A DNA stretch of 51,649 nucleotides from Octopus bimaculoides. Its lineage: Eukaryota. Positions 12,137-44,614 of this stretch are shown in pieces. Location of the stretch: assembly GCF_001194135.2 (NCBI RefSeq), contig NC_068983.1, forward strand, positions 10,554,438-10,606,086, given 5' to 3'. Each line of letters opens with the position of its first letter. Position 1 is the stretch's first letter. The notes below the pieces were generated by a model that worked only from the letters and a program-made list of their open reading frames with translations, did no database searches and was not told the DNA's origin. A program made the position numbers and the translations under genes.

Positions 12137-12581
12137 TCGATGACTGGCACCCGTGCCAGTGGAGCGCTAACAGCTCCATCCGAGCAGGGTCACTGCCAGA
12201 GCAGCTGTCTGGCTTCCGTGCCGGTAGCACGTAAAAAAGCACCATTTGAGCATGATCATTACCAGCATCGCCTTACTGGCACTTGTGGCGGTGGCATGTG
12301 AACAAAACATTGGACTGGCTCCTGTGCAGGTGGCACGTAAAAAACATCAATTGAGCGTGGCCGTTGCCAGTACCACCAGACTGGCCCTCGTGCCAGTGGC
12401 ACGTAAAAGCACCCACTACACTCTTGGAGTGGTTGGCGTCAGGAAGGGCATCGAGCTGTAGAAACTCTGCCAGATCAGATTGGAACCTGGTGCAGCCATC
12501 TGGTTCGCCAGTCCTCAGTCAAATCGTCCAACCCATGCTAGCATGGAAAGCGGACGTTAAACGACGATGATGATGATGATA
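12137..12581 (+). mobile_element. Family B copy (long, four module variants)
   Basis: Same core and tail as the other copies. 5' part matches the reverse complement of 17600-17690. Confidence 0.9.
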
Positions 12582-12904: not shown

Positions 12905-13463
12905 TCATCATCATCATTAATATTATTATTATCATTATTATTATTATTACTACTATTATTATTTCTATTATTATTATTATCATCATTATTATTATCATCA
13001 TTATTATTATCATCATTATTATTATTACTATTATTATTACTATTATTATCATTACTATTATTATTATTATTATTACTATTATTATCATTACTATTATTAT
13101 CATTATTACTATTATTATTATCGTTATTATTACTATTATTATTATCGTTATTATTATTTATTATTATTATCATTATTACTATTATTATTATTATCATTAT
13201 TATTACTATTATTATCATTATTATCATTATCATTGTTATCACTATTATTATTATTACTATCATTATTATTATTACTATTATTATCATTACTATTATTATC
13301 ATTATTACTATTATTACTATTGTTATTATTATTATCATTATTACTATTATTATCATTACTATTATTATTATCATTACTATAGGTAATATTAGGACTGCTA
13401 TGACTCCTCTGGAAGGAATATGTAAATAGAGAAGAAGAGTTCTATAATAAAATTTTTTTATTT

Positions 13464-13502
<39 letters not shown>

Positions 13503-13551
13503 CTATTATTATTACTATTATTATTACTATTATTATTACTATTATTATTAC

Positions 13552-13586
<35 letters not shown>
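12905..13586. repeat. Compound (ATT/ATC/ACT)n microsatellite, two blocks
   Basis: 12905-13380 and 13465-13586. Explains the poly-I/L/N ORFs. Confidence 0.97.
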
Positions 13587-13587
<1 letters not shown>

Positions 13588-13868
13588 GGAGGTGAGCTGG
13601 CAGAATTGTTAGCACACCAGACAAAACGCTAAGTGGCAATTCCTCTGTCTTTATGTTCTGTGTTCAAATTGAACTGAGAGTGACTTTGCCCATTATCCTT
13701 TCTGGGTTGATGAAATAAAGTACAAAAGCAAAACCTATCTCAATGGGATTTGAACTTGGAATATAACGGGACATCACTAAATAACATAAAGCTTTAACTG
13801 CCTGCTCTACAAACTCTGCTAACCAATAGCCTTCACTGAATTATAATAAAAAACAACATTCAATATAC

Positions 13869-13971
13869 CTTCTAAAACTTGTGTGATGTCTTCTTTAAAT
13901 TCCCGAAACTGGAACGGTGCAAGAAATCCAAGAGAGCCAAGATGGAAAGACATTACTGGGGGTACACTTTG
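13869..13971 (-). CDS. NADK: NAD kinase exon (QSVPPVMSFHLGSLGFLAPFQFREFKEDITQVLE)
   Basis: Manual translation. VPPV..FHLGSLGFL motif. Acceptor ttcaacag, donor gtatat. 103 nt, phase 0 to 1. Confidence 0.96.
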
Positions 13972-14556
13972 CTGTTGAATAACACATTAAAATACTATAA
14001 GAATAAATTCATTACAAACGACTCAACTTATCAAGTTTATAATTTCATATTCAAATAAAGAATTCAGAAAAGCAATAGAATAACATTTAAGTGTCTGAAA
14101 CGTGTTGTTATTAATAAGATCATTGCATTGTTAAGAGGGAAAATTTTTTTTAATAAATGATAAAATGATTCATCTCTGAAAATAACAAGGGCATTAAAAA
14201 TTATAACCTCATTAACAGGTTGATAATTCATTGTTGCTACATGGAGTTTCTCGTCATGTATTCTCCATGAAGCTGAAAGACTGTATGAAGGATGCTTTAA
14301 GGTTGGAAAGAAAGTCTTATAATAGTGATAGAGTGAATCAGTTCCTTCAAGCAAACAAATAAATTATATGCATTGATTTGTACATTTTTTTTCATGTATG
14401 CATTGAGAACTTTTTTCCCTTCTTTGCATATCCAAATATATATATATAATCATAATAATAATAATATTAGGGGTAAAAATCCAAATTTACAGGTAAAAAC
14501 TCAATTAAAATCAATTTATTAAAAAATTAAAATTAAATTAAGTTTCACAGTATAAA

Positions 14557-14854
14557 ATATATATAGTTTTAGGGAAAAGAACCAAAGTTCATGAACTCAT
14601 CGATGAAAATCTACTGTCACATATAGAAAAATTAATAAGTAAAAGCACAATAAATAAGTATAATATAATACAAAGTTAATATCATAAGATAATGATAATA
14701 ATAATAATAATATAATCATTATCTTATGATATTAACTTTGTATTATATTATACTTATTTATTGTGCTTTTACTTATTAATTTTTCTATACGTGACAGTAG
14801 ATTTTCATCGATGAGTTCATGAACTTTGGTTCTTTTCCCTAAAACTATATATAT
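14557..14854. repeat. Long inverted repeat: 140-bp arms, 18-nt spacer, one mismatch
   Basis: 14557-14696 is the reverse complement of 14715-14854 except cacAtat versus cacGtat. Confidence 0.97.
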
Positions 14855-15387
14855 ATATATATATAATCATATATATATTTCTAAGATTTAAAAGGAAATA
14901 TACATTTTTTTCTCTCTTTTAATCTTTTAGCTCTTACATGGACTGTGGCCATGTTGGGGCACCACCGTGATGGCTTTAATTGAACAAATCAACTCCAGTA
15001 TTCATTCTGTAAGTTTCTTTTGCTGAACCACAAAGTTAAAGGGACATAAACAAACCAACACTAGTTGCCAAGTGGTGCTGAGGATTAAACACAAAGACAC
15101 ACACACACACAAACACGATGAACTTCCACACACTTTCTATCACTCACAGGGCAGTGGTTCGCCTAGGGCTATAGCAAAAGACACTTGCTTTATGTTTTAT
15201 GAAGTGGGCCTGAACCTGAAACCATGTGGTTACAAAGCAAGCTTCTTAACCACACAGCCATGTCTGCACCAATATATGAGAATATATTTACTTCCTAATT
15301 TTATATTACTTTTAACGTTGTTAAAGCTGATATCAACAAAGTAAATAAATATAGGGAATGTGTATGTAAAACTTAAAAAGAAAATAC

Positions 15388-15473
15388 CTGGAAAAGAGAT
15401 GCTGCATACATCAAGGTTCCATCTCCTCCTAAACATATCACAAGATCTATGCGGTCTGTTAGGTCTTCATTAT
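15388..15473 (-). CDS. NADK: NAD kinase exon with GGDGT catalytic motif (DNEDLTDRIDLVICLGGDGTLMYAASLFQ)
   Basis: Manual translation, not in the ORF track. Acceptor tttcttaaacag, donor gtattt. 86 nt, phase 1 to 0. Confidence 0.96.
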
Positions 15474-15517: not shown

Positions 15518-15927
15518 TTCATCATCATCGTTTAATGTCCACTTTCCATGCTAGCATGGGTTGGACGATTTGACTGAGGACTGGCGAACCAGATGGCTGC
15601 ACCAGGCTCCAATCTGATCTGGCAGAGTTTCTACAGCTGGATGCCCTTCCTAACGCCAACCACTCCAAGAGTGTAGTGGGTGCTTTTACGTGCCACTGGC
15701 ACGAAGGCCAGTCAGGCGGTACTGGCAACAGCCACGCTCGAAATGGTGTTTTTTATGTGCCACCTGCACAGGAGCCAGTCCAGCGGCACTGGCAACGATT
15801 TTGCTCGAATGACTTTTCACATGCCACCGGCACAAGTGCCAGGAAGGCAATGTTGGTAACGATCACGCTCAAATGGTGCTATTTACATGCCACTGGCACA
15901 GAAGCCAGACAACTGTTCTGGCAACGT
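15518..15927 (-). mobile_element. Family B copy ending about 45 nt upstream of a NADK 3' splice site
   Basis: catcatcatcgtttaatgtccactttccatgctagcatggg start on plus; modules follow. Confidence 0.9.
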
Positions 15928-16349
15928 TTAATATAATTAATATTGTTTCATCACTGCAAACTGGGTTTTTGGATTCTCTTATGATACAGTCTTGCCATTA
16001 ATACTTGTTAATCACAAGGACTGTAAAAAAATAAAGAAAAAAATTGGGTTAATTAGTACCATTATTTGACCGATGGCTGGATTTTTATATATTTTATAAC
16101 CGTATTACTGGCATTATCATATTACAGCAGACAGAATCATTAGCATATTGGGTGAAATGATTATCAGCATTTCTTCTGACTCTTTACATTCTGAGTTAAA
16201 GTTCTGCTGAGGTCAACTTTGCCTTTCATCCTTTCGAGGTCGATAAAATAAGTACCATTTGAATGCTGGGGGTTGATGTAATCTACTCATCCCCTCCCGC
16301 AAAACTGCTGCCCCTGTGGCAAAATTTGAAACCATTATTATGCTGAAAA

Positions 16350-16695
16350 CTAGCTCCTGTGTCGGTGGCACATAAAAAGCATCTTTCGAGTGTTGGGCCT
16401 CACAGAGGCAATGACAAATGACCAAGAATTTTGGCAATATGTAGTGCTTGAGTAGAAGACCCATCAAGTCAAGTGAGATCACATTCATGGCAGATATTGG
16501 CATCAGGCAACTGGCACATAAAAGCAACCATTATACTATCGGAGTGGTTGGCACTAGGAAGGGCATCCAATCGTAGAAACCACACCAAATCAGACTGGAG
16601 TCTGGTGCAGCTCTTCAGCTTACCAGCCCTCGTCAAACTGTCCAACCCATGCCAGCAAGGACAACAAACATTAAATAATAATGATGATGATGATA
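16350..16695 (+). mobile_element. Older family B variant retaining the RTE ORF end
   Basis: Reads RVLGLTEAMTNDQEFWQYVVL-EKTHQVK* directly upstream of the B core and (GAT)n tail. Confidence 0.7.
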
Positions 16696-17257
16696 ATTTC
16701 TGACATATATACAAGGTCACACATTTGGGGGAGGTAGGGTAGTGACAATCATATCGACAGTCATGAACTACTACATGCCCAATAATTAATTTTATTGATC
16801 CTATAAAGACAAAAGCAAAGTCTAATCCAGCAGCATTTACTACATTAATATATGTTAATTATCTTTAGAATTCCATTTAATTACAGCTATGCTTAATGAA
16901 CTTACATTATTTCACTTTTAAATTTAATTTCAGAATATGCCAAAATGAGGAATCAACTGTGACAATGATGAGTAAGGAAATTTTGCTCTTTGTAAAATAA
17001 TAAATTTGATTTACAAAAATGTATTTATCTTAAAAGCAGGTATTACATATAGGTGCAGACATGCTGTGTGGTAAGAAGTTTACTTCCCAACCATATGGTC
17101 TTGGGTTCAGTCCATTGCATGGCACCTTGGGTAAATGTCTTCTACTACAGCCCTGGGCTGATCAACATTATTACTCTATGTATTGAATAGGGTAGTAGAA
17201 GAAGGTGTATAACATATACAATGACTGTATACTGGAAAGTGTGTACAACATAAAGTA

Positions 17258-17692
17258 TCATCATCGTTTAATGTTCGCTTTCCATGCTAGCATGGGTTGG
17301 ACGATTTGACTGAGGACTGGCAAACCAGATGGCTGCACCAGGCTCCAATCTGATCTGGCAGAGTTTCTACAGCTGGATGCCCTTCCTAACGCCAACCACT
17401 CCGAGAGTGTAGTGGGTGCTTTTACGTGCCACTGGCACGAAGGTTGGTCAGGTGGTACTGGCAACGGCCACGCTTAAAATGGTGTATCTTACATGCCACC
17501 TGCACAGGAGCCAGTCCAGCGGCACTGGTAACGACCTCGCTCGAATGTCTTTTCACGTGCCAGTAAGGCAACACTGGTAACGATCACACTCAAATGGTGC
17601 TATTTACATGCCACTGGCACGGAAGCCTGACAGCTGCTCTGGCAATGATAACAATCGGATGGTGCTCTTAGTGCTCCACTGGTGCAGGTGCC
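17258..17692 (-). mobile_element. Family B copy
   Basis: High similarity to 15518-15927 and 12137-12581. Confidence 0.9.
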
Positions 17693-21506: not shown

Positions 21507-22425
21507 NNNNNNNNNNNNNNNNNNNNNNNNNNNNNNNNNNNNNNNNNNNNNNNNNNNNNNNNNNNNNNNNNNNNNNNNNNNNNNNNNNNNNNNNNNNNNN
21601 NNNNNNNNNNNNNNNNNNNNNNNNNNNNNNNNNNNNNNNNNNNNNNNNNNNNNNNNNNNNNNNNNNNNNNNNNNNNNNNNNNNNNNNNNNNNNNNNNNNN
21701 NNNNNNNNNNNNNNNNNNNNNNNNNNNNNNNNNNNNNNNNNNNNNNNNNNNNNNNNNNNNNNNNNNNNNNNNNNNNNNNNNNNNNNNNNNNNNNNNNNNN
21801 NNNNNNNNNNNNNNNNNNNNNNNNNNNNNNNNNNNNNNNNNNNNNNNNNNNNNNNNNNNNNNNNNNNNNNNNNNNNNNNNNNNNNNNNNNNNNNNNNNNN
21901 NNNNNNNNNNNNNNNNNNNNNNNNNNNNNNNNNNNNNNNNNNNNNNNNNNNNNNNNNNNNNNNNNNNNNNNNNNNNNNNNNNNNNNNNNNNNNNNNNNNN
22001 NNNNNNNNNNNNNNNNNNNNNNNNNNNNNNNNNNNNNNNNNNNNNNNNNNNNNNNNNNNNNNNNNNNNNNNNNNNNNNNNNNNNNNNNNNNNNNNNNNNN
22101 NNNNNNNNNNNNNNNNNNNNNNNNNNNNNNNNNNNNNNNNNNNNNNNNNNNNNNNNNNNNNNNNNNNNNNNNNNNNNNNNNNNNNNNNNNNNNNNNNNNN
22201 NNNNNNNNNNNNNNNNNNNNNNNNNNNNNNNNNNNNNNNNNNNNNNNNNNNNNNNNNNNNNNNNNNNNNNNNNNNNNNNNNNNNNNNNNNNNNNNNNNNN
22301 NNNNNNNNNNNNNNNNNNNNNNNNNNNNNNNNNNNNNNNNNNNNNNNNNNNNNNNNNNNNNNNNNNNNNNNNNNNNNNNNNNNNNNNNNNNNNNNNNNNN
22401 NNNNNNNNNNNNNNNNNNNNNNNNN
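21507..22425. other. Assembly gap
   Basis: Run of N. Confidence 1.
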
Positions 22426-33444: not shown

Positions 33445-34667
33445 CATCATCATCATCATCATCATCGTTTAACGTCCGCCTTCCATGCTAGCATGGGTTG
33501 GACGATTTGACTGAGGACTGGTGAAACCGGATGGCAACACCAGGCTCCAATCTAATTTGGCAGAGTTTCTACAGCTGGATGCCCTTCCTAACGCCAACCA
33601 CTCAGAGAATGTAGTGGGTGCTTTTACGTGTCACCCGCACGAAAACGGCCACGCTCGAAATGGTGTCTTTTATGTGCNNNNNNNNNNNNNNNNNNNNNNN
33701 NNNNNNNNNNNNNNNNNNNNNNNNNNNNNNNNNNNNNNNNNNNNNNNNNNNNNNNNNNNNNNNNNNNNNNNNNNNNNNNNNNNNNNNNNNNNNNNNNNNN
33801 NNNNNNNNNNNNNNNNNNNNNNNNNNNNNNNNNNNNNNNNNNNNNNNNNNNNNNNNNNNNNNNNNNNNNNNNNNNNNNNNNNNNNNNNNNNNNNNNNNNN
33901 NNNNNNNNNNNNNNNNNNNNNNNNNNNNNNNNNNNNNNNNNNNNNNNNNNNNNNNNNNNNNNNNNNNNNNNNNNNNNNNNNNNNNNNNNNNNNNNNNNNN
34001 NNNNNNNNNNNNNNNNNNNNNNNNNNNNNNNNNNNNNNNNNNNNNNNNNNNNNNNNNNNNNNNNNNNNNNNNNNNNNNNNNNNNNNNNNNNNNNNNNNNN
34101 NNNNNNNNNNNNNNNNNNNNNNNNNNNNNNNNNNNNNNNNNNNNNNNNNNNNNNNNNNNNNNNNNNNNNNNNNNNNNNNNNNNNNNNNNNNNNNNNNNNN
34201 NNNNNNNNNNNNNNNNNNNNNNNNNNNNNNNNNNNNNNNNNNNNNNNNNNNNNNNNNNNNNNNNNNNNNNNNNNNNNNNNNNNNNNNNNNNNNNNNNNNN
34301 NNNNNNNNNNNNNNNNNNNNNNNNNNNNNNNNNNNNNNNNNNNNNNNNNNNNNNNNNNNNNNNNNNNNNNNNNNNNNNNNNNNNNNNNNNNNNNNNNNNC
34401 CGCACAAGAGCCGGCCCAGCGGCGTCGCCCGCACATGAGCCAGTCCAGGGGCACTGGCAACGAACCCGCTCAAACATTTCATGTGTCGCCCGCACATGAG
34501 CCAGTCCATGGGCACTGGCAACGATCCCGCTCGAAAGATTCAGGTGTCGCCCGCACATGAGCCAGTCCAGGGGCACTGGCAACGATTCCGCTTGAACGAT
34601 TTCATGTGTCACCCGCACATGAGCCAGTCCAGGGGCACCGGCAACGATCTCGCTCGAAAAACCTCAT
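33445..34667 (-). mobile_element. Family B copy with expanded 61-62 bp tandem array (contains gap)
   Basis: cccgcacatgagccagtcc recurs at 34428, 34489, 34550 and 34612. N gap 33678-34399 is internal. Confidence 0.88.
33678..34399. other. Assembly gap
   Basis: Run of N. Confidence 1.
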
Positions 34668-41249: not shown

Positions 41250-41852
41250 TTACTCTCTCTTTTACTTGTTCCAGTCATTTGACTGCGGCCATGCTGGAGC
41301 ACCGCCTTTAGTCGAGCAAATCGACCCCAGGACTTATTCTTTGTAAGTCTAGTACTTATTCTATCGGTCACTTTTGCTAACTGCTAAGTTACAGGGACGT
41401 AAACACACCAGCATCGGTTGTCAAGCGACGTTGGGGGGACAAACACACACACACACACATACATACATACATACATATCATCATCANNNNNNNNNNNNNN
41501 NNNNNNNNNNNNNNNNNNNNNNNNNNNNNNNNNNNNNNNNNNNNNNNNNNNNNNNNNNNNNNNNNNNNNNNNNNNNNNNNNNNNNNNNNNNNNNNNNNNN
41601 NNNNNNNNNNNNNNNNNNNNNNNNNNNNNNNNNNNNNNNNNNNNNNNNNNNNNNNNNNNNNNNNNNNNNNNNNNNNNNNNNNNNNNNNNNNNNNNNNNNN
41701 NNNNNNNNNNNNNNNNNNNNNNNNNNNNNNNNNNNNNNNNNNNNNNNNNNNNNNNNNNNNNNNNNNNNNNNNNNNNNNNNNNNNNNNNNNNNNNNNNNNN
41801 NNNNNNNNNNNNNNNNNNNNNNNNNNNNNNNNNNNNNNNNNNNNNNNNNNNN

Positions 41853-42055: not shown

Positions 42056-42170
42056 GAATGAACTGGAGCAACAGGAAATGAAGTGACTTGCTCAAGAACA
42101 CTGAACGCTTTCTCACAGACACACACACACTGGAAAATGTGTGAGATCCTTGGTACAGTTGGGTATATTT

Positions 42171-42318
42171 GAAAAAAGAAAAATAATGACTTCACTGGTA
42201 GTTCTAATCAGTTTAATTTATTATTTTTTAATAATATAAATGTAAAATTCATATTATTAAAATAATAATAAATCAAACTGATTAGAACTACCAGTGAAGT
42301 CATTCTTTTTCCTTTTTC
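42171..42318. repeat. Inverted repeat: 67/68-bp arms, 13-nt spacer
   Basis: aatgacttcactggtagttctaatcagttt and aaactgattagaactaccagtgaagtcatt form a perfect core. About four differences overall. Confidence 0.93.
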
Positions 42319-42322
42319 ATAG

Positions 42323-42380
<58 letters not shown>

Positions 42381-43532: not shown

Positions 43533-44614
43533 AAATCTTCCGAGTGGGATCGTTGCCGGTGCCCCTGGGCTGGCTTTTGTGCAGGTGACACATGAGGTTT
43601 TTTGAGCGAGATCGTTGCCGGTGCCCCTGGACTGGCTCTTGTGCGGGTGACACATGAGANNNNNNNNNNNNNNNNNNNNNNNNNNNNNNNNNNNNNNNNN
43701 NNNNNNNNNNNNNNNNNNNNNNNNNNNNNNNNNNNNNNNNNNNNNNNNNNNNNNNNNNNNNNNNNNNNNNNNNNNNNNNNNNNNNNNNNNNNNNNNNNNN
43801 NNNNNNNNNNNNNNNNNNNNNNNNNNNNNNNNNNNNNNNNNNNNNNNNNNNNNNNNNNNNNNNNNNNNNNNNNNNNNNNNNNNNNNNNNNNNNNNNNNNN
43901 NNNNNNNNNNNNNNNNNNNNNNNNNNNNNNNNNNNNNNNNNNNNNNNNNNNNNNNNNNNNNNNNNNNNNNNNNNNNNNNNNNNNNNNNNNNNNNNNNNNN
44001 NNNNNNNNNNNNNNNNNNNNNNNNNNNNNNNNNNNNNNNNNNNNNNNNNNNNNNNNNNNNNNNNNNNNNNNNNNNNNNNNNNNNNNNNNNNNNNNNNNNN
44101 NNNNNNNNNNNNNNNNNNNNNNNNNNNNNNNNNNNNNNNNNNNNNNNNNNNNNNNNNNNNNNNNNNNNNNNNNNNNNNNNNNNNNNNNNNNNNNNNNNTT
44201 CGAGCGAGATTGTTGCCGGTGCCCCTGAACTGGCTCTTGTGTGGGGTTGTCGTAGGATTTTCGAGCGAGATTGTTGCCGGTGCCCCTGAACTGGCTCTTG
44301 TGTGGGGTTGTCGTAGGATTTTCGAGCGAGATCGTTGCCGGTGCCCCTGGACTGGCTCTTGTGCGGGTGACACATGAGACTTTTCGAGCGAGATGAGCGT
44401 GGCCGTTGCCGGTGCTGCCAGGCTGGCCTTCGTGCGGGTGACACGTAAAAGCACCCACTACACTCTCTGAGTGGTTGGCGTTAGGAAGGGCATCCAGCTG
44501 TAGAAACTCTGCCAGACCAGATTGGAGCCTGGTGCAGCCATCTGGTTTCACCAGTCCTCAGTCAAATCGTCCAACCCATGCTAGCATGGAAAGCGGACGT
44601 TAAACGACAACGAC
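43533..44614 (+). mobile_element. Family B copy with 61-62 bp tandem array, nested in a family A SINE (TSD GTTG)
   Basis: GTTG at 43529-43532 and 44615-44618. Flanks rejoin into the SINE A sequence. Gap 43660-44198 is internal. Confidence 0.85.
43660..44198. other. Assembly gap
   Basis: Run of N. Confidence 1.

What the first reader, a model, noticed from the sequence alone, without database searches (positions are those of the whole stretch)
14436..14871. Single TSD-flanked insertion forming a 140-bp perfect duplex inside a NADK intron
Seen: arms 14557-14696 and 14715-14854 differ by one base. It is an A.C mismatch on plus but a G.U pair on the transcribed minus strand, and is compatible with CpG decay. 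The roughly 400-bp insert is bracketed by the same 19-mer (AT)6A-ATCATA at 14436-14454 and 14853-14871. The left copy extends about 100 bp further to an (ATA)n end. The right arm starts at a (TA)n microhomology with the target. Inference: two cDNAs were primed from both target strands on the same template (twin-priming-like) and both ended at the same point. Established: long intramolecular dsRNA is an ADAR/Dicer substrate and coleoids edit heavily. The hairpin lies about 0.55 kb from both flanking exons.
Basis: partly seen in the sequence, partly recalled or inferred. Interest (0 to 1): 0.7.

Follow-up and report, generated by a model that had tools for sequence, protein, structure and literature searches.

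The report
Young hairpin-forming insertion in octopus NADK intron
A 398-bp AT-rich insert with a duplicated 19-bp target site lies in one intron of the Octopus bimaculoides NAD kinase gene and is absent from two sister species. It carries a nearly perfect 147-bp inverted duplication that should fold into long double-stranded RNA, which makes it a tidy but fairly ordinary case of insertion-linked template switching.

Summary
The arms 14557-14703 and 14708-14854 are 98% complementary (1 mismatch over the central 140 nt). An exact 19-mer brackets a 398-bp insert. The locus is a 1416-bp intron of NADK on the minus strand, and the window is Octopus bimaculoides.

I fetched the orthologous loci of O. 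sinensis and O. vulgaris. Both have a clean empty site with one copy of the 19-mer. The insertion and its target-site duplication (TSD) are therefore real and specific to one lineage. The arms are about 13 times less diverged than the flanks, so the palindrome is young.

The insert has no other copy in 276 kb of octopus sequence. It matches no tRNA, Rfam family or protein. Its ends are not inverted repeats, so it is not a MITE. It consists of two diverged ~100-130-bp monomers, each starting with an AT microsatellite, and all three junctions fall on those microsatellites.

The best reading is one templated insertion, most likely target-primed reverse transcription, in which the same 147 nt were copied in both orientations. 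Classical twin priming is not met. Effects on RNA editing, Dicer processing or splicing were not tested. Interest is modest.

The parts
14436..14454 (+). Left copy of the target-site duplication, ATATATATATATAATCATA
   Evidence: Exact 19-mer with only two copies in the window. The same 19-mer occurs once at the empty site of O. sinensis and O. vulgaris.
14455..14852 (.). The 398-bp insert, specific to the O. bimaculoides lineage (GC 19.8%, against 31.7% in the rest of the intron)
   Evidence: Absent from the orthologous intron of O. sinensis (L004) and O. vulgaris (L005), whose flanks align at 89-90% identity.
14455..14556 (+). Single-copy 102-bp part ('monomer 1'). It starts with an (ATA)n tract next to the left TSD.
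   Evidence: It is a diverged direct repeat of 14557-14660 (z = 4.3-6.3 against dinucleotide shuffles, 0/400 shuffles as good).
14557..14703 (+). Left arm of the palindrome ('monomer 2'). It starts with ATATATATA.
14697..14714 (+). Asymmetric single-copy centre, AATAATAATAATAATATA. It pairs with itself except for two A.A mismatches around the loop at 14704-14707.
14708..14854 (+). Right arm, the reverse complement of the left arm. Its outer (TA) run merges with the right TSD.
14853..14871 (+). Right copy of the target-site duplication
14621..14621 (+). The only difference between the 140-nt arms (A here, C at 14790). It is a U.G wobble in the minus-strand transcript, and the right arm keeps a CpG.
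15388..15473 (-). Upstream NADK exon (GGDGT motif), 533 nt from the hairpin
13869..13971 (-). Downstream NADK exon (GSLGFL motif), 585 nt from the hairpin

Best explanation
After O. bimaculoides split from the O. sinensis/O. vulgaris lineage, a single templated insertion landed in an (AT)6 tract of this NADK intron. Staggered breaks about 17-19 nt apart produced the duplicated 19-mer.

The template was a low-copy, AT-rich, ~258-nt sequence. It consists of two diverged monomers, each headed by an AT microsatellite.

Synthesis was primed from the plus-strand 3' end after 14454, using ATA microhomology with the template's (ATT)n/(ATA)n end. It ran to an (AAT)n tract. The last 147 nt were then copied a second time in the opposite orientation. 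This happened in one of two ways. Either the other target end, whose 3' overhang ends in (AT)n, primed on the internal (UA)n of the same template (double-ended priming). Or the nascent strand snapped back on its (AAT)n end, copied itself, and was captured by the (AT)n overhang.

The polymerase was most likely a retroelement reverse transcriptase acting in trans by target-primed reverse transcription (TPRT). Candidates are an active RTE-type LINE with a microsatellite tail, or a Penelope-like element.

The consequence is that the NADK pre-mRNA now carries a 147-bp near-perfect hairpin in an intron. This is predicted to be a substrate for promiscuous A-to-I editing and removed with the intron. 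There is no evidence that it has a function.

Shown: the insertion, the TSD, lineage specificity, youth, microhomology at all three junctions, and the predicted fold. Inferred: an RNA intermediate, the enzyme, the order of steps, and every downstream effect.
For: The empty site in two species holds exactly one 19-mer.

Flank divergence between O. bimaculoides and the other two species is K2P 0.08-0.11. The arms differ at 1 of 140 positions. The palindrome is therefore roughly 7% of the age of the split. The split is put at 13.3-33.5 Mya in PMC13282606.

All three junctions sit on AT microsatellites: the (ATA)n tract that starts at 14455 (array called at 14446-14466), (AT)n at 14557-14565 with its complement at 14846-14854, and (AAT)n at 14689-14716.

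Lineage-specific SINE insertions in these same loci have TSDs of 5-18 bp, so 17-19 bp lies at the upper edge of the local TPRT range.

Resident SINE tails are (GAT)n, (AAT)n or (ATT)n. PMC9115989 reports an active RTE whose 3' UTR is a microsatellite in O. vulgaris, and non-reference RTE insertions in O. bimaculoides.

Inverted duplications made by small snap-back hairpins, and twin-priming intermediates, are documented at L1 TPRT sites (bioRxiv 10.1101/2024.12.14.628481). PLE/Naiad insertions show tandem or inverted structures, variable TSDs, a (TA)n target bias and trans-mobilisation of host RNAs (PMC8557442).

The predicted hairpin is -213 kcal/mol for the arms alone.
Against: There is no direct sign of an RNA intermediate. 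The insert has no recognisable retroelement, no pol III head, no poly(A), and no other copies in 276 kb.

The orientation of the template is ambiguous. The (GAT/AAT)n tract at the palindrome centre looks like the sense tail of the local SINEs. That would put the 3' end at the centre rather than next to the left TSD.

The same product is predicted by a DNA-polymerase template switch.

Polarity rests on parsimony and arm identity, because O. sinensis and O. vulgaris are effectively one lineage (K2P 0.0015) and no further outgroup was available.

The palindrome is supported by one short-read assembly only.
Confidence: 0.55

Rival explanations
1. DNA-level replicative template switching (FoSTeS/MMBIR type), with no RNA or transposon machinery. 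The nascent plus strand left the template after ...AATCATA and copied about 258 nt from a distant AT-rich locus using ATA microhomology. It folded back on its own (AAT)n end and copied 147 nt of itself. It then re-annealed by its (TA)n end to the (AT)6 tract 19 nt upstream of the departure point and re-replicated the 19-mer. On this reading the '19-bp TSD' is a re-replicated stretch.
For: Every junction shows microhomology in a hairpin-prone AT microsatellite. The return point coincides exactly with the only (AT)n tract next to the departure point. The insert has no transposon features.
Against: No donor lies within the 89-kb O. bimaculoides locus. TSD-flanked insertions of 200-400 bp in these loci are overwhelmingly retroposons, so the prior favours TPRT. 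Three consecutive switches that restore the flank perfectly are rare.
Confidence: 0.22
2. Two steps. First, an ordinary TSD-flanked retroposition of a plus-sense ~250-nt unit placed its (GAT/AAT)n 3' tail against the right TSD. Later, a replication snap-back at that tail copied 147 nt backwards and returned to the adjacent (AT)6.
For: On the plus strand the centre reads GATAATGAT(AAT)5, like the sense tails of resident SINEs such as GATGATGATGATGATAATGA. In the step-1 product the departure and return points would be adjacent. The centre tract is single-copy and asymmetric.
Against: This needs two rare events at one site within a short time, because the arms differ at only 1 of 140 positions. 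No intermediate allele is known.
Confidence: 0.12
3. A foldback or MITE-type DNA transposon family. The palindrome is the element and was cut and pasted into a TA-rich target.
For: Octopus genomes do hold MITE-like palindromes. One is the 259-bp element at L004:88439-88697, matched at L005:84381-84637. The arms here are bounded by (TA) runs.
Against: The segment missing from the empty site is asymmetric: 102 bp of single-copy sequence plus the palindrome. Its termini are not inverted repeats. A 17-19-bp duplication is longer than any fixed DNA-transposon TSD that I know of (own knowledge). There is no second copy, even a diverged one, in 276 kb.
Confidence: 0.06
4. The insertion is real, but the palindrome is an artefact of short-read assembly or gap closure. 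For example, a collapsed longer structure, or a heterozygous SNP placed once in each arm.
For: The window is a gapped draft with four N runs. The chromosome-scale record re-uses the same shotgun contigs (PMC9068888). PMC8557442 notes that inverted insertions trouble short-read assemblies.
Against: Both outer junctions and the centre are spanned by sequence more complex than the short repeats. The right junction joins the arm end to the TSD and then to a flank that is orthologous in two species. The only path from the left flank to the right flank runs through the arm twice (inference).
Confidence: 0.07

Closest known systems
L1 twin priming (5'-inverted LINE insertions)
   Same: TSD-flanked insertion. 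One segment is primed by each of the two staggered target 3' ends. There is microhomology at the internal priming site. The inverted part lies at the end away from the tail.
   Different: In twin priming the two cDNAs cover adjacent template segments with little overlap (own knowledge; an intermediate is shown in bioRxiv 10.1101/2024.12.14.628481). Here the inverted segment repeats 147 nt of the direct one and makes a hairpin with a 4-nt loop. The insert is not a recognisable LINE, and the tail is an AT microsatellite rather than poly(A).
Inverted duplications at L1 TPRT sites by snap-back of a 3' end (bioRxiv 10.1101/2024.12.14.628481)
   Same: Self-annealing through a small hairpin with a few bases of microhomology, followed by fill-in, at a retrotransposition-induced break.
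   Different: Those cases duplicate flanking genomic DNA in human cells and tumours. Here the duplicated stretch is the newly inserted sequence itself, fixed in (or at least present in) a germline assembly.
Penelope-like element (Naiad/Penelope) complex insertions (PMC8557442)
   Same: Variable-length TSD, preference for (TA)n targets, inverted copies formed during one integration, and the ability to mobilise host RNAs in trans. PLEs are recently active in O. vulgaris (PMC13282606).
   Different: No PLE sequence, pseudo-LTR or hammerhead is present. In PLEs the inverted copy is 5'-truncated and keeps its 3' end. Here the shorter copy lacks the outer end and shares the inner end.
Inverted Alu or SINE pairs in introns as ADAR substrates
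   Same: Intramolecular dsRNA from young inverted repeats within one transcript, which is the main class of A-to-I targets across metazoans (PMC9989829).
   Different: Those arise from two independent insertions hundreds of bases apart and are 10-20% diverged. Examples are the 77-78% SINE pairs at 15576-17436 in this gene. This hairpin was made in one event, is about 99% paired and has a 4-nt loop.
MITEs and foldback elements
   Same: A short non-coding palindrome, and AT-rich.
   Different: The inserted segment has asymmetric ends, the TSD is 17-19 bp, and no family was detected.

Membership tests
Classical twin-primed TPRT insertion | TSD flanking the whole insertion | tested here: met
   The 19-mer is duplicated in O. 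bimaculoides and single at the empty site.
Classical twin-primed TPRT insertion | Template 3' tail abuts one TSD | tested here: inconclusive
   The (ATA)n/(ATT)n tract that starts at 14455 abuts the left TSD. A tail-like (GAT/AAT)n tract also sits at the centre, so the orientation is ambiguous.
Classical twin-primed TPRT insertion | The inverted segment comes from the template region 5' of the direct segment, with little or no overlap | tested here: not met
   The inverted arm is the reverse complement of 147 nt already present in the direct segment.
Classical twin-primed TPRT insertion | The inserted sequence is a retroelement or cellular RNA | not testable with these tools
   No octopus genome or transcriptome could be searched. 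There is no hit in 276 kb, Rfam, ARAGORN or the protein database.
MITE / foldback DNA transposon | Terminal inverted repeats at the ends of the mobilised segment | tested here: not met
   The segment missing from the empty site is 14455-14852. Its left end is 102 bp of single-copy sequence.
MITE / foldback DNA transposon | Short TSD of fixed length | tested here: not met
   The duplication is 17-19 bp.
MITE / foldback DNA transposon | Multiple dispersed copies | tested here: inconclusive
   None in 89 kb of O. bimaculoides plus 187 kb of the sister species by blastn and nhmmer. The whole genome was not available.
Penelope-like element insertion | PLE sequence (RT/GIY-YIG ORF, pseudo-LTR, hammerhead ribozyme) | tested here: not met
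   No Rfam hit to hammerhead models at E <= 1. ORF translations have no homologues.
Penelope-like element insertion | Variable TSD and (TA)n target bias | tested here: met
   The target is (AT)6AATCATA and the TSD is 17-19 bp. The feature is as described in PMC8557442.
SINE | Pol III-type head (tRNA, 5S or 7SL related) and high copy number | tested here: not met
   ARAGORN found 0 genes. Rfam found nothing at gathering score. No copies were found in 276 kb, whereas the resident SINE occurs many times.
miRNA precursor / hpRNA locus | Match to a curated family, or small-RNA reads | tested here: not met
   The only hit is mir-2513 at 36 bits against a gathering score of 89, on both strands. This is a generic AT-rich hairpin effect. 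Small-RNA data are not available.
ADAR hyper-editing substrate | Long intramolecular dsRNA within a transcribed region | tested here: met
   147-bp duplex, z = -35, inside a spliced NADK intron.
ADAR hyper-editing substrate | Clustered A-to-G mismatches in RNA reads | not testable with these tools
   No RNA-seq access. The supplements of PMC9989829 list recoding sites only.

The most novel reading that the evidence does not exclude
Octopus retroelement machinery (RTE-type LINE or Penelope-like element) can, in one integration at an (AT)n microsatellite, copy a non-transposon RNA from both target ends. This would create a perfect long intronic hairpin from nothing. It would be a one-step route to new dsRNA substrates for ADAR or Dicer, separate from the usual pairing of two independently inserted repeats, and possibly recurrent in coleoid genomes. 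A second tight hairpin specific to O. bimaculoides lies in the same gene at 42165-42324.
Probability: 0.15. Interest if true: 0.6.

Novelty: new variant of a known kind. Interest (0 to 1): 0.35.

Why it matters
This is a datable, fully resolved example with both filled and empty sites. It shows how a near-perfect 147-bp intramolecular dsRNA can appear inside a housekeeping gene in one mutational step. If such events recur in coleoids, they would add to the pool of young dsRNA that ADAR acts on. They would also give a natural test of what a perfect intronic hairpin does to splicing, editing and small-RNA production. As a single locus with an unknown donor and no expression data, it is mainly a clean illustration of insertion-linked template switching at AT microsatellites.

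Tried and rejected
1. Other copies in the window. blastn of the unit and the arm found only low-complexity hits to the (AAT)n microsatellite at 12916-13590.

2. Public DNA scans with arm k-mers. Metagenomes gave three chance 20-21-mer matches with no extension. Viral and prokaryotic genome collections gave none.

3. Protein-space search with concatenated intronic and arm ORFs, to catch contigs from other individuals. No hits.

4. Short two-exon query. It returned only 71-112-aa fragments at 77% identity or less. A longer query built from seven exons was needed to reach the octopus proteins. The exons were located with a human NADK probe written from memory, used only as a probe.

5. Rfam. There is only a sub-threshold generic hairpin hit and nothing at gathering score. 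ARAGORN found nothing.

6. Hammerhead or retrozyme idea. The CGATGAG...GAAC stretch lacks a helix II and has no Rfam support, so I rejected it.

7. piggyBac-like ends (TTTTAGGG...CCCTAAAA). The orientation is the reverse of piggyBac termini and there is no TTAA, so I rejected it.

8. Mitochondrial origin (NUMT). I could not test this because no octopus mtDNA was to hand. A 19-bp TSD would be atypical for a NUMT.

9. Second hairpin at 42165-42324. I tried to find its empty site, but the region is not alignable between species because of SINE turnover and an N gap.

10. First local alignment of the two monomers with stiff gap penalties and mononucleotide shuffles was not significant. With milder gap costs and dinucleotide shuffles it was.

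11. Editing-site supplements of PMC9989829 hold recoding sites only.

Full report
**1. The observation**

The sequence is as described. The repeat finder reports arms 14557-14703 and 14708-14854, 147 nt, 98% complementary, 4 nt apart. A base-by-base check gives three mismatches. One is 14621 A against 14790 C. The other two are A.A pairs next to the loop (14697/14714 and 14701/14710).

That base is a U.G wobble on the minus strand. The right arm keeps a CpG (CACGTA) where the left arm equivalent reads CACATA.

The 19-mer ATATATATATATAATCATA is exact at 14436-14454 and 14853-14871. It occurs nowhere else in the window and cannot be extended. Between the left 19-mer and the left arm lie 102 single-copy bases that begin with (ATA)n.

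As minus-strand RNA, the region folds at -243.8 kcal/mol against -70.4 +/- 5.0 for shuffles. It is the best inverted repeat in the window by a wide margin.

**2. Context**

The minus strand carries NADK. The exon at 15388-15473 encodes ...ICLGGDGTLMYAASLFQ, and the exon at 13869-13971 encodes QSVPPVMSFHLGSLGFL.... Pfam NAD_kinase scores E = 6e-17.

Seven concatenated exons are 100% identical to NAD kinase isoform X2 of Octopus bimaculoides (XP_052821970.1). The window is therefore O. bimaculoides, and annotated transcripts splice across this intron. The intron is 1416 bp, and the hairpin lies 533 nt and 585 nt from the two exons.

The window has four N gaps. The chromosome-scale record (L006) is identical over the region. 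It was built from the earlier shotgun assembly plus Hi-C (PMC9068888), so it is not independent support.

**3. The decisive comparison**

Through the protein cluster I fetched the NADK loci of O. sinensis (L004) and O. vulgaris (L005). The intron aligns at 89-90% identity on both sides. About 430 bp of O. bimaculoides sequence face 45 bp in the other two species.

At base level both species read ...TTGCATATCCAA[ATATATATATATAATCATA]CATATATTCCTAAGATT.... That is one copy of the 19-mer directly followed by the right flank.

The 398 bp at 14455-14852, plus a second copy of the 19-mer, are thus an insertion with a genuine target-site duplication. The TA overlap makes the duplication 17-19 bp.

A separate ~30-bp indel lies 10 bp further right.

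Flank divergence is K2P 0.08-0.11. The arms differ at 1 of 140 positions (Poisson 95% range 0.0002-0.04 per site). The palindrome is therefore about 7% of the age of the species split, barring gene conversion. The split is quoted as 13.3-33.5 Mya in PMC13282606.

O. sinensis and O. vulgaris differ by only 0.15% here, so they count as one lineage. A precise deletion in that lineage is formally possible, but it is unparsimonious and at odds with the near-identical arms.

**4. What the insert is**

It is very AT-rich, with GC 19.8% against 31.7% in the rest of the intron.

It has no other copy in the window. It has none, even diverged, in 89 kb of O. bimaculoides or 187 kb of the sister species.

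It has no tRNA-like head and no Rfam match apart from a sub-threshold generic hairpin hit. It has no protein homologue and no match in metagenomic, viral or prokaryotic collections.

One new feature emerged. The 102-bp left part is a diverged direct repeat of the first ~100 nt of the arm (z = 4.3-6.3, 0/400 dinucleotide shuffles as good). The template was therefore two tandem monomers, each headed by an AT microsatellite, followed by the microsatellite of a third.

All three rearrangement junctions fall on these microsatellites:
- the left junction at 14455;
- the outer end of the arms at 14557/14854;
- the palindrome centre at 14697-14714.

The centre tract, (AAT)5ATA, is single-copy and asymmetric. 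It pairs with itself except for A.A mismatches.

**5. Mechanism**

Lineage-specific SINE insertions are frequent in these loci and carry TSDs of 5-18 bp. Resident SINE tails are (GAT)n, (AAT)n or (ATT)n. An RTE LINE whose 3' UTR is a microsatellite is expressed in O. vulgaris. An RTE also shows non-reference insertions in O. bimaculoides (PMC9115989). Penelope-like elements are recently active in O. vulgaris too (PMC13282606). A target-primed event therefore has the highest prior probability.

With a nick after 14454 on the plus strand and a second nick 19 nt upstream on the minus strand, both fragments carry 19-nt 3' overhangs. The plus-strand overhang (...TCATA-3') can prime on an (AUU)n end, which gives 14455 through to the centre.

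The right arm can then arise in either of two ways:
- (a) The minus-strand overhang (...ATATAT-3') primes on the internal (UA)n. Both cDNAs run to the same (AAT)n end, where they anneal and fill in.
- (b) The first cDNA snaps back on its (AAT)n end and copies itself until its (TA)n end is captured by the (AT)n overhang.

Both give exactly the observed product.

Two further routes also give it. One is a purely DNA-level series of template switches. The other is a two-step history in which a plus-sense unit with a SINE-like (GAT/AAT)n tail against the right TSD later suffered a replication snap-back.

Classical twin priming is not met, because the two segments overlap completely.

Related behaviours are documented. 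Snap-back inverted duplications and twin-priming intermediates occur at L1 sites (bioRxiv 10.1101/2024.12.14.628481). PLE/Naiad elements form inverted structures, have variable TSDs and prefer (TA)n targets (PMC8557442).

A MITE or foldback element is unlikely. The mobilised segment lacks terminal inverted repeats, the TSD is too long, and no family was found.

**6. Consequences**

A 147-bp near-perfect duplex in a pre-mRNA intron is well above the length at which ADARs edit promiscuously (established knowledge). Young inverted repeats are the main A-to-I targets across metazoans (PMC9989829). Editing, Dicer processing and splicing effects at this locus are untested. The gene is annotated as normally spliced. 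Long perfect palindromes are generally unstable in DNA (own knowledge), which fits the young age.

**7. Verdict**

The specific mechanism remains one of several equivalent readings, and the donor is unknown. This is a new variant of known insertion-associated inversion and duplication phenomena, and a clean textbook-style case rather than a surprise. Interest is 0.35.

Noticed in passing
window 15519-15926: A 406-bp SINE specific to O. bimaculoides, in sense to NADK, with a (GAT)n tail. Its tail ends only about 45 nt upstream of the 3' splice site of exon 15473-15388. The site is empty in O. sinensis (L004 73956/73957), and there is no clear TSD.
   Followed up: partly
window ~14888 (between 14880 and 14890); L004:74585-74616: A ~30-bp indel 10 bp to the right of the right TSD. 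ATAACCTTACAAATAAAGGATTTACTCGGATT is present in O. sinensis and O. vulgaris and absent in O. bimaculoides. It is bounded by GATT microhomology, and its polarity is unknown.
   Followed up: partly
window 42165-42229 / 42260-42324: A second tight hairpin in the same gene: 65-nt arms, 91% complementary, 30-nt AT-rich loop. It lies between a (CA)n and a (TG)n tract and is unrelated in sequence to the first. It was not found in the O. sinensis or O. vulgaris loci, but the surrounding 3-6 kb cannot be aligned because of SINE turnover and an N gap.
   Followed up: partly
window 12916-13590: A ~675-bp impure (AAT)n-type microsatellite in the next NADK intron. Together with the SINE at 12140-12570 it lies in a 1466-bp stretch that faces only 119 bp in O. 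sinensis.
   Followed up: no
window 15576-15700, 16507-16631, 17312-17436: SINE copies in opposite orientations (77-78% complementary, 0.7-0.8 kb apart) in the upstream intron. These are the ordinary kind of potential dsRNA, useful as a contrast with the one-event hairpin.
   Followed up: no
L004:88439-88697 and L005:84381-84637: A MITE-like 259-bp palindrome (TGCAGCG...CGCTGCA, ~91% self-complementary, GC-richer) shared by O. sinensis and O. vulgaris near the 3' end of NADK. The matching O. bimaculoides region is gapped.
   Followed up: no
window 14455-14660: The insert has internal structure: two diverged tandem monomers of ~100-130 bp, each starting with an AT microsatellite followed by TTAGGG.
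   Followed up: yes
window 21507-22425, 33678-34399, 41487-41852, 43660-44198: Four N gaps, so the window comes from a scaffolded short-read draft.
   Followed up: yes
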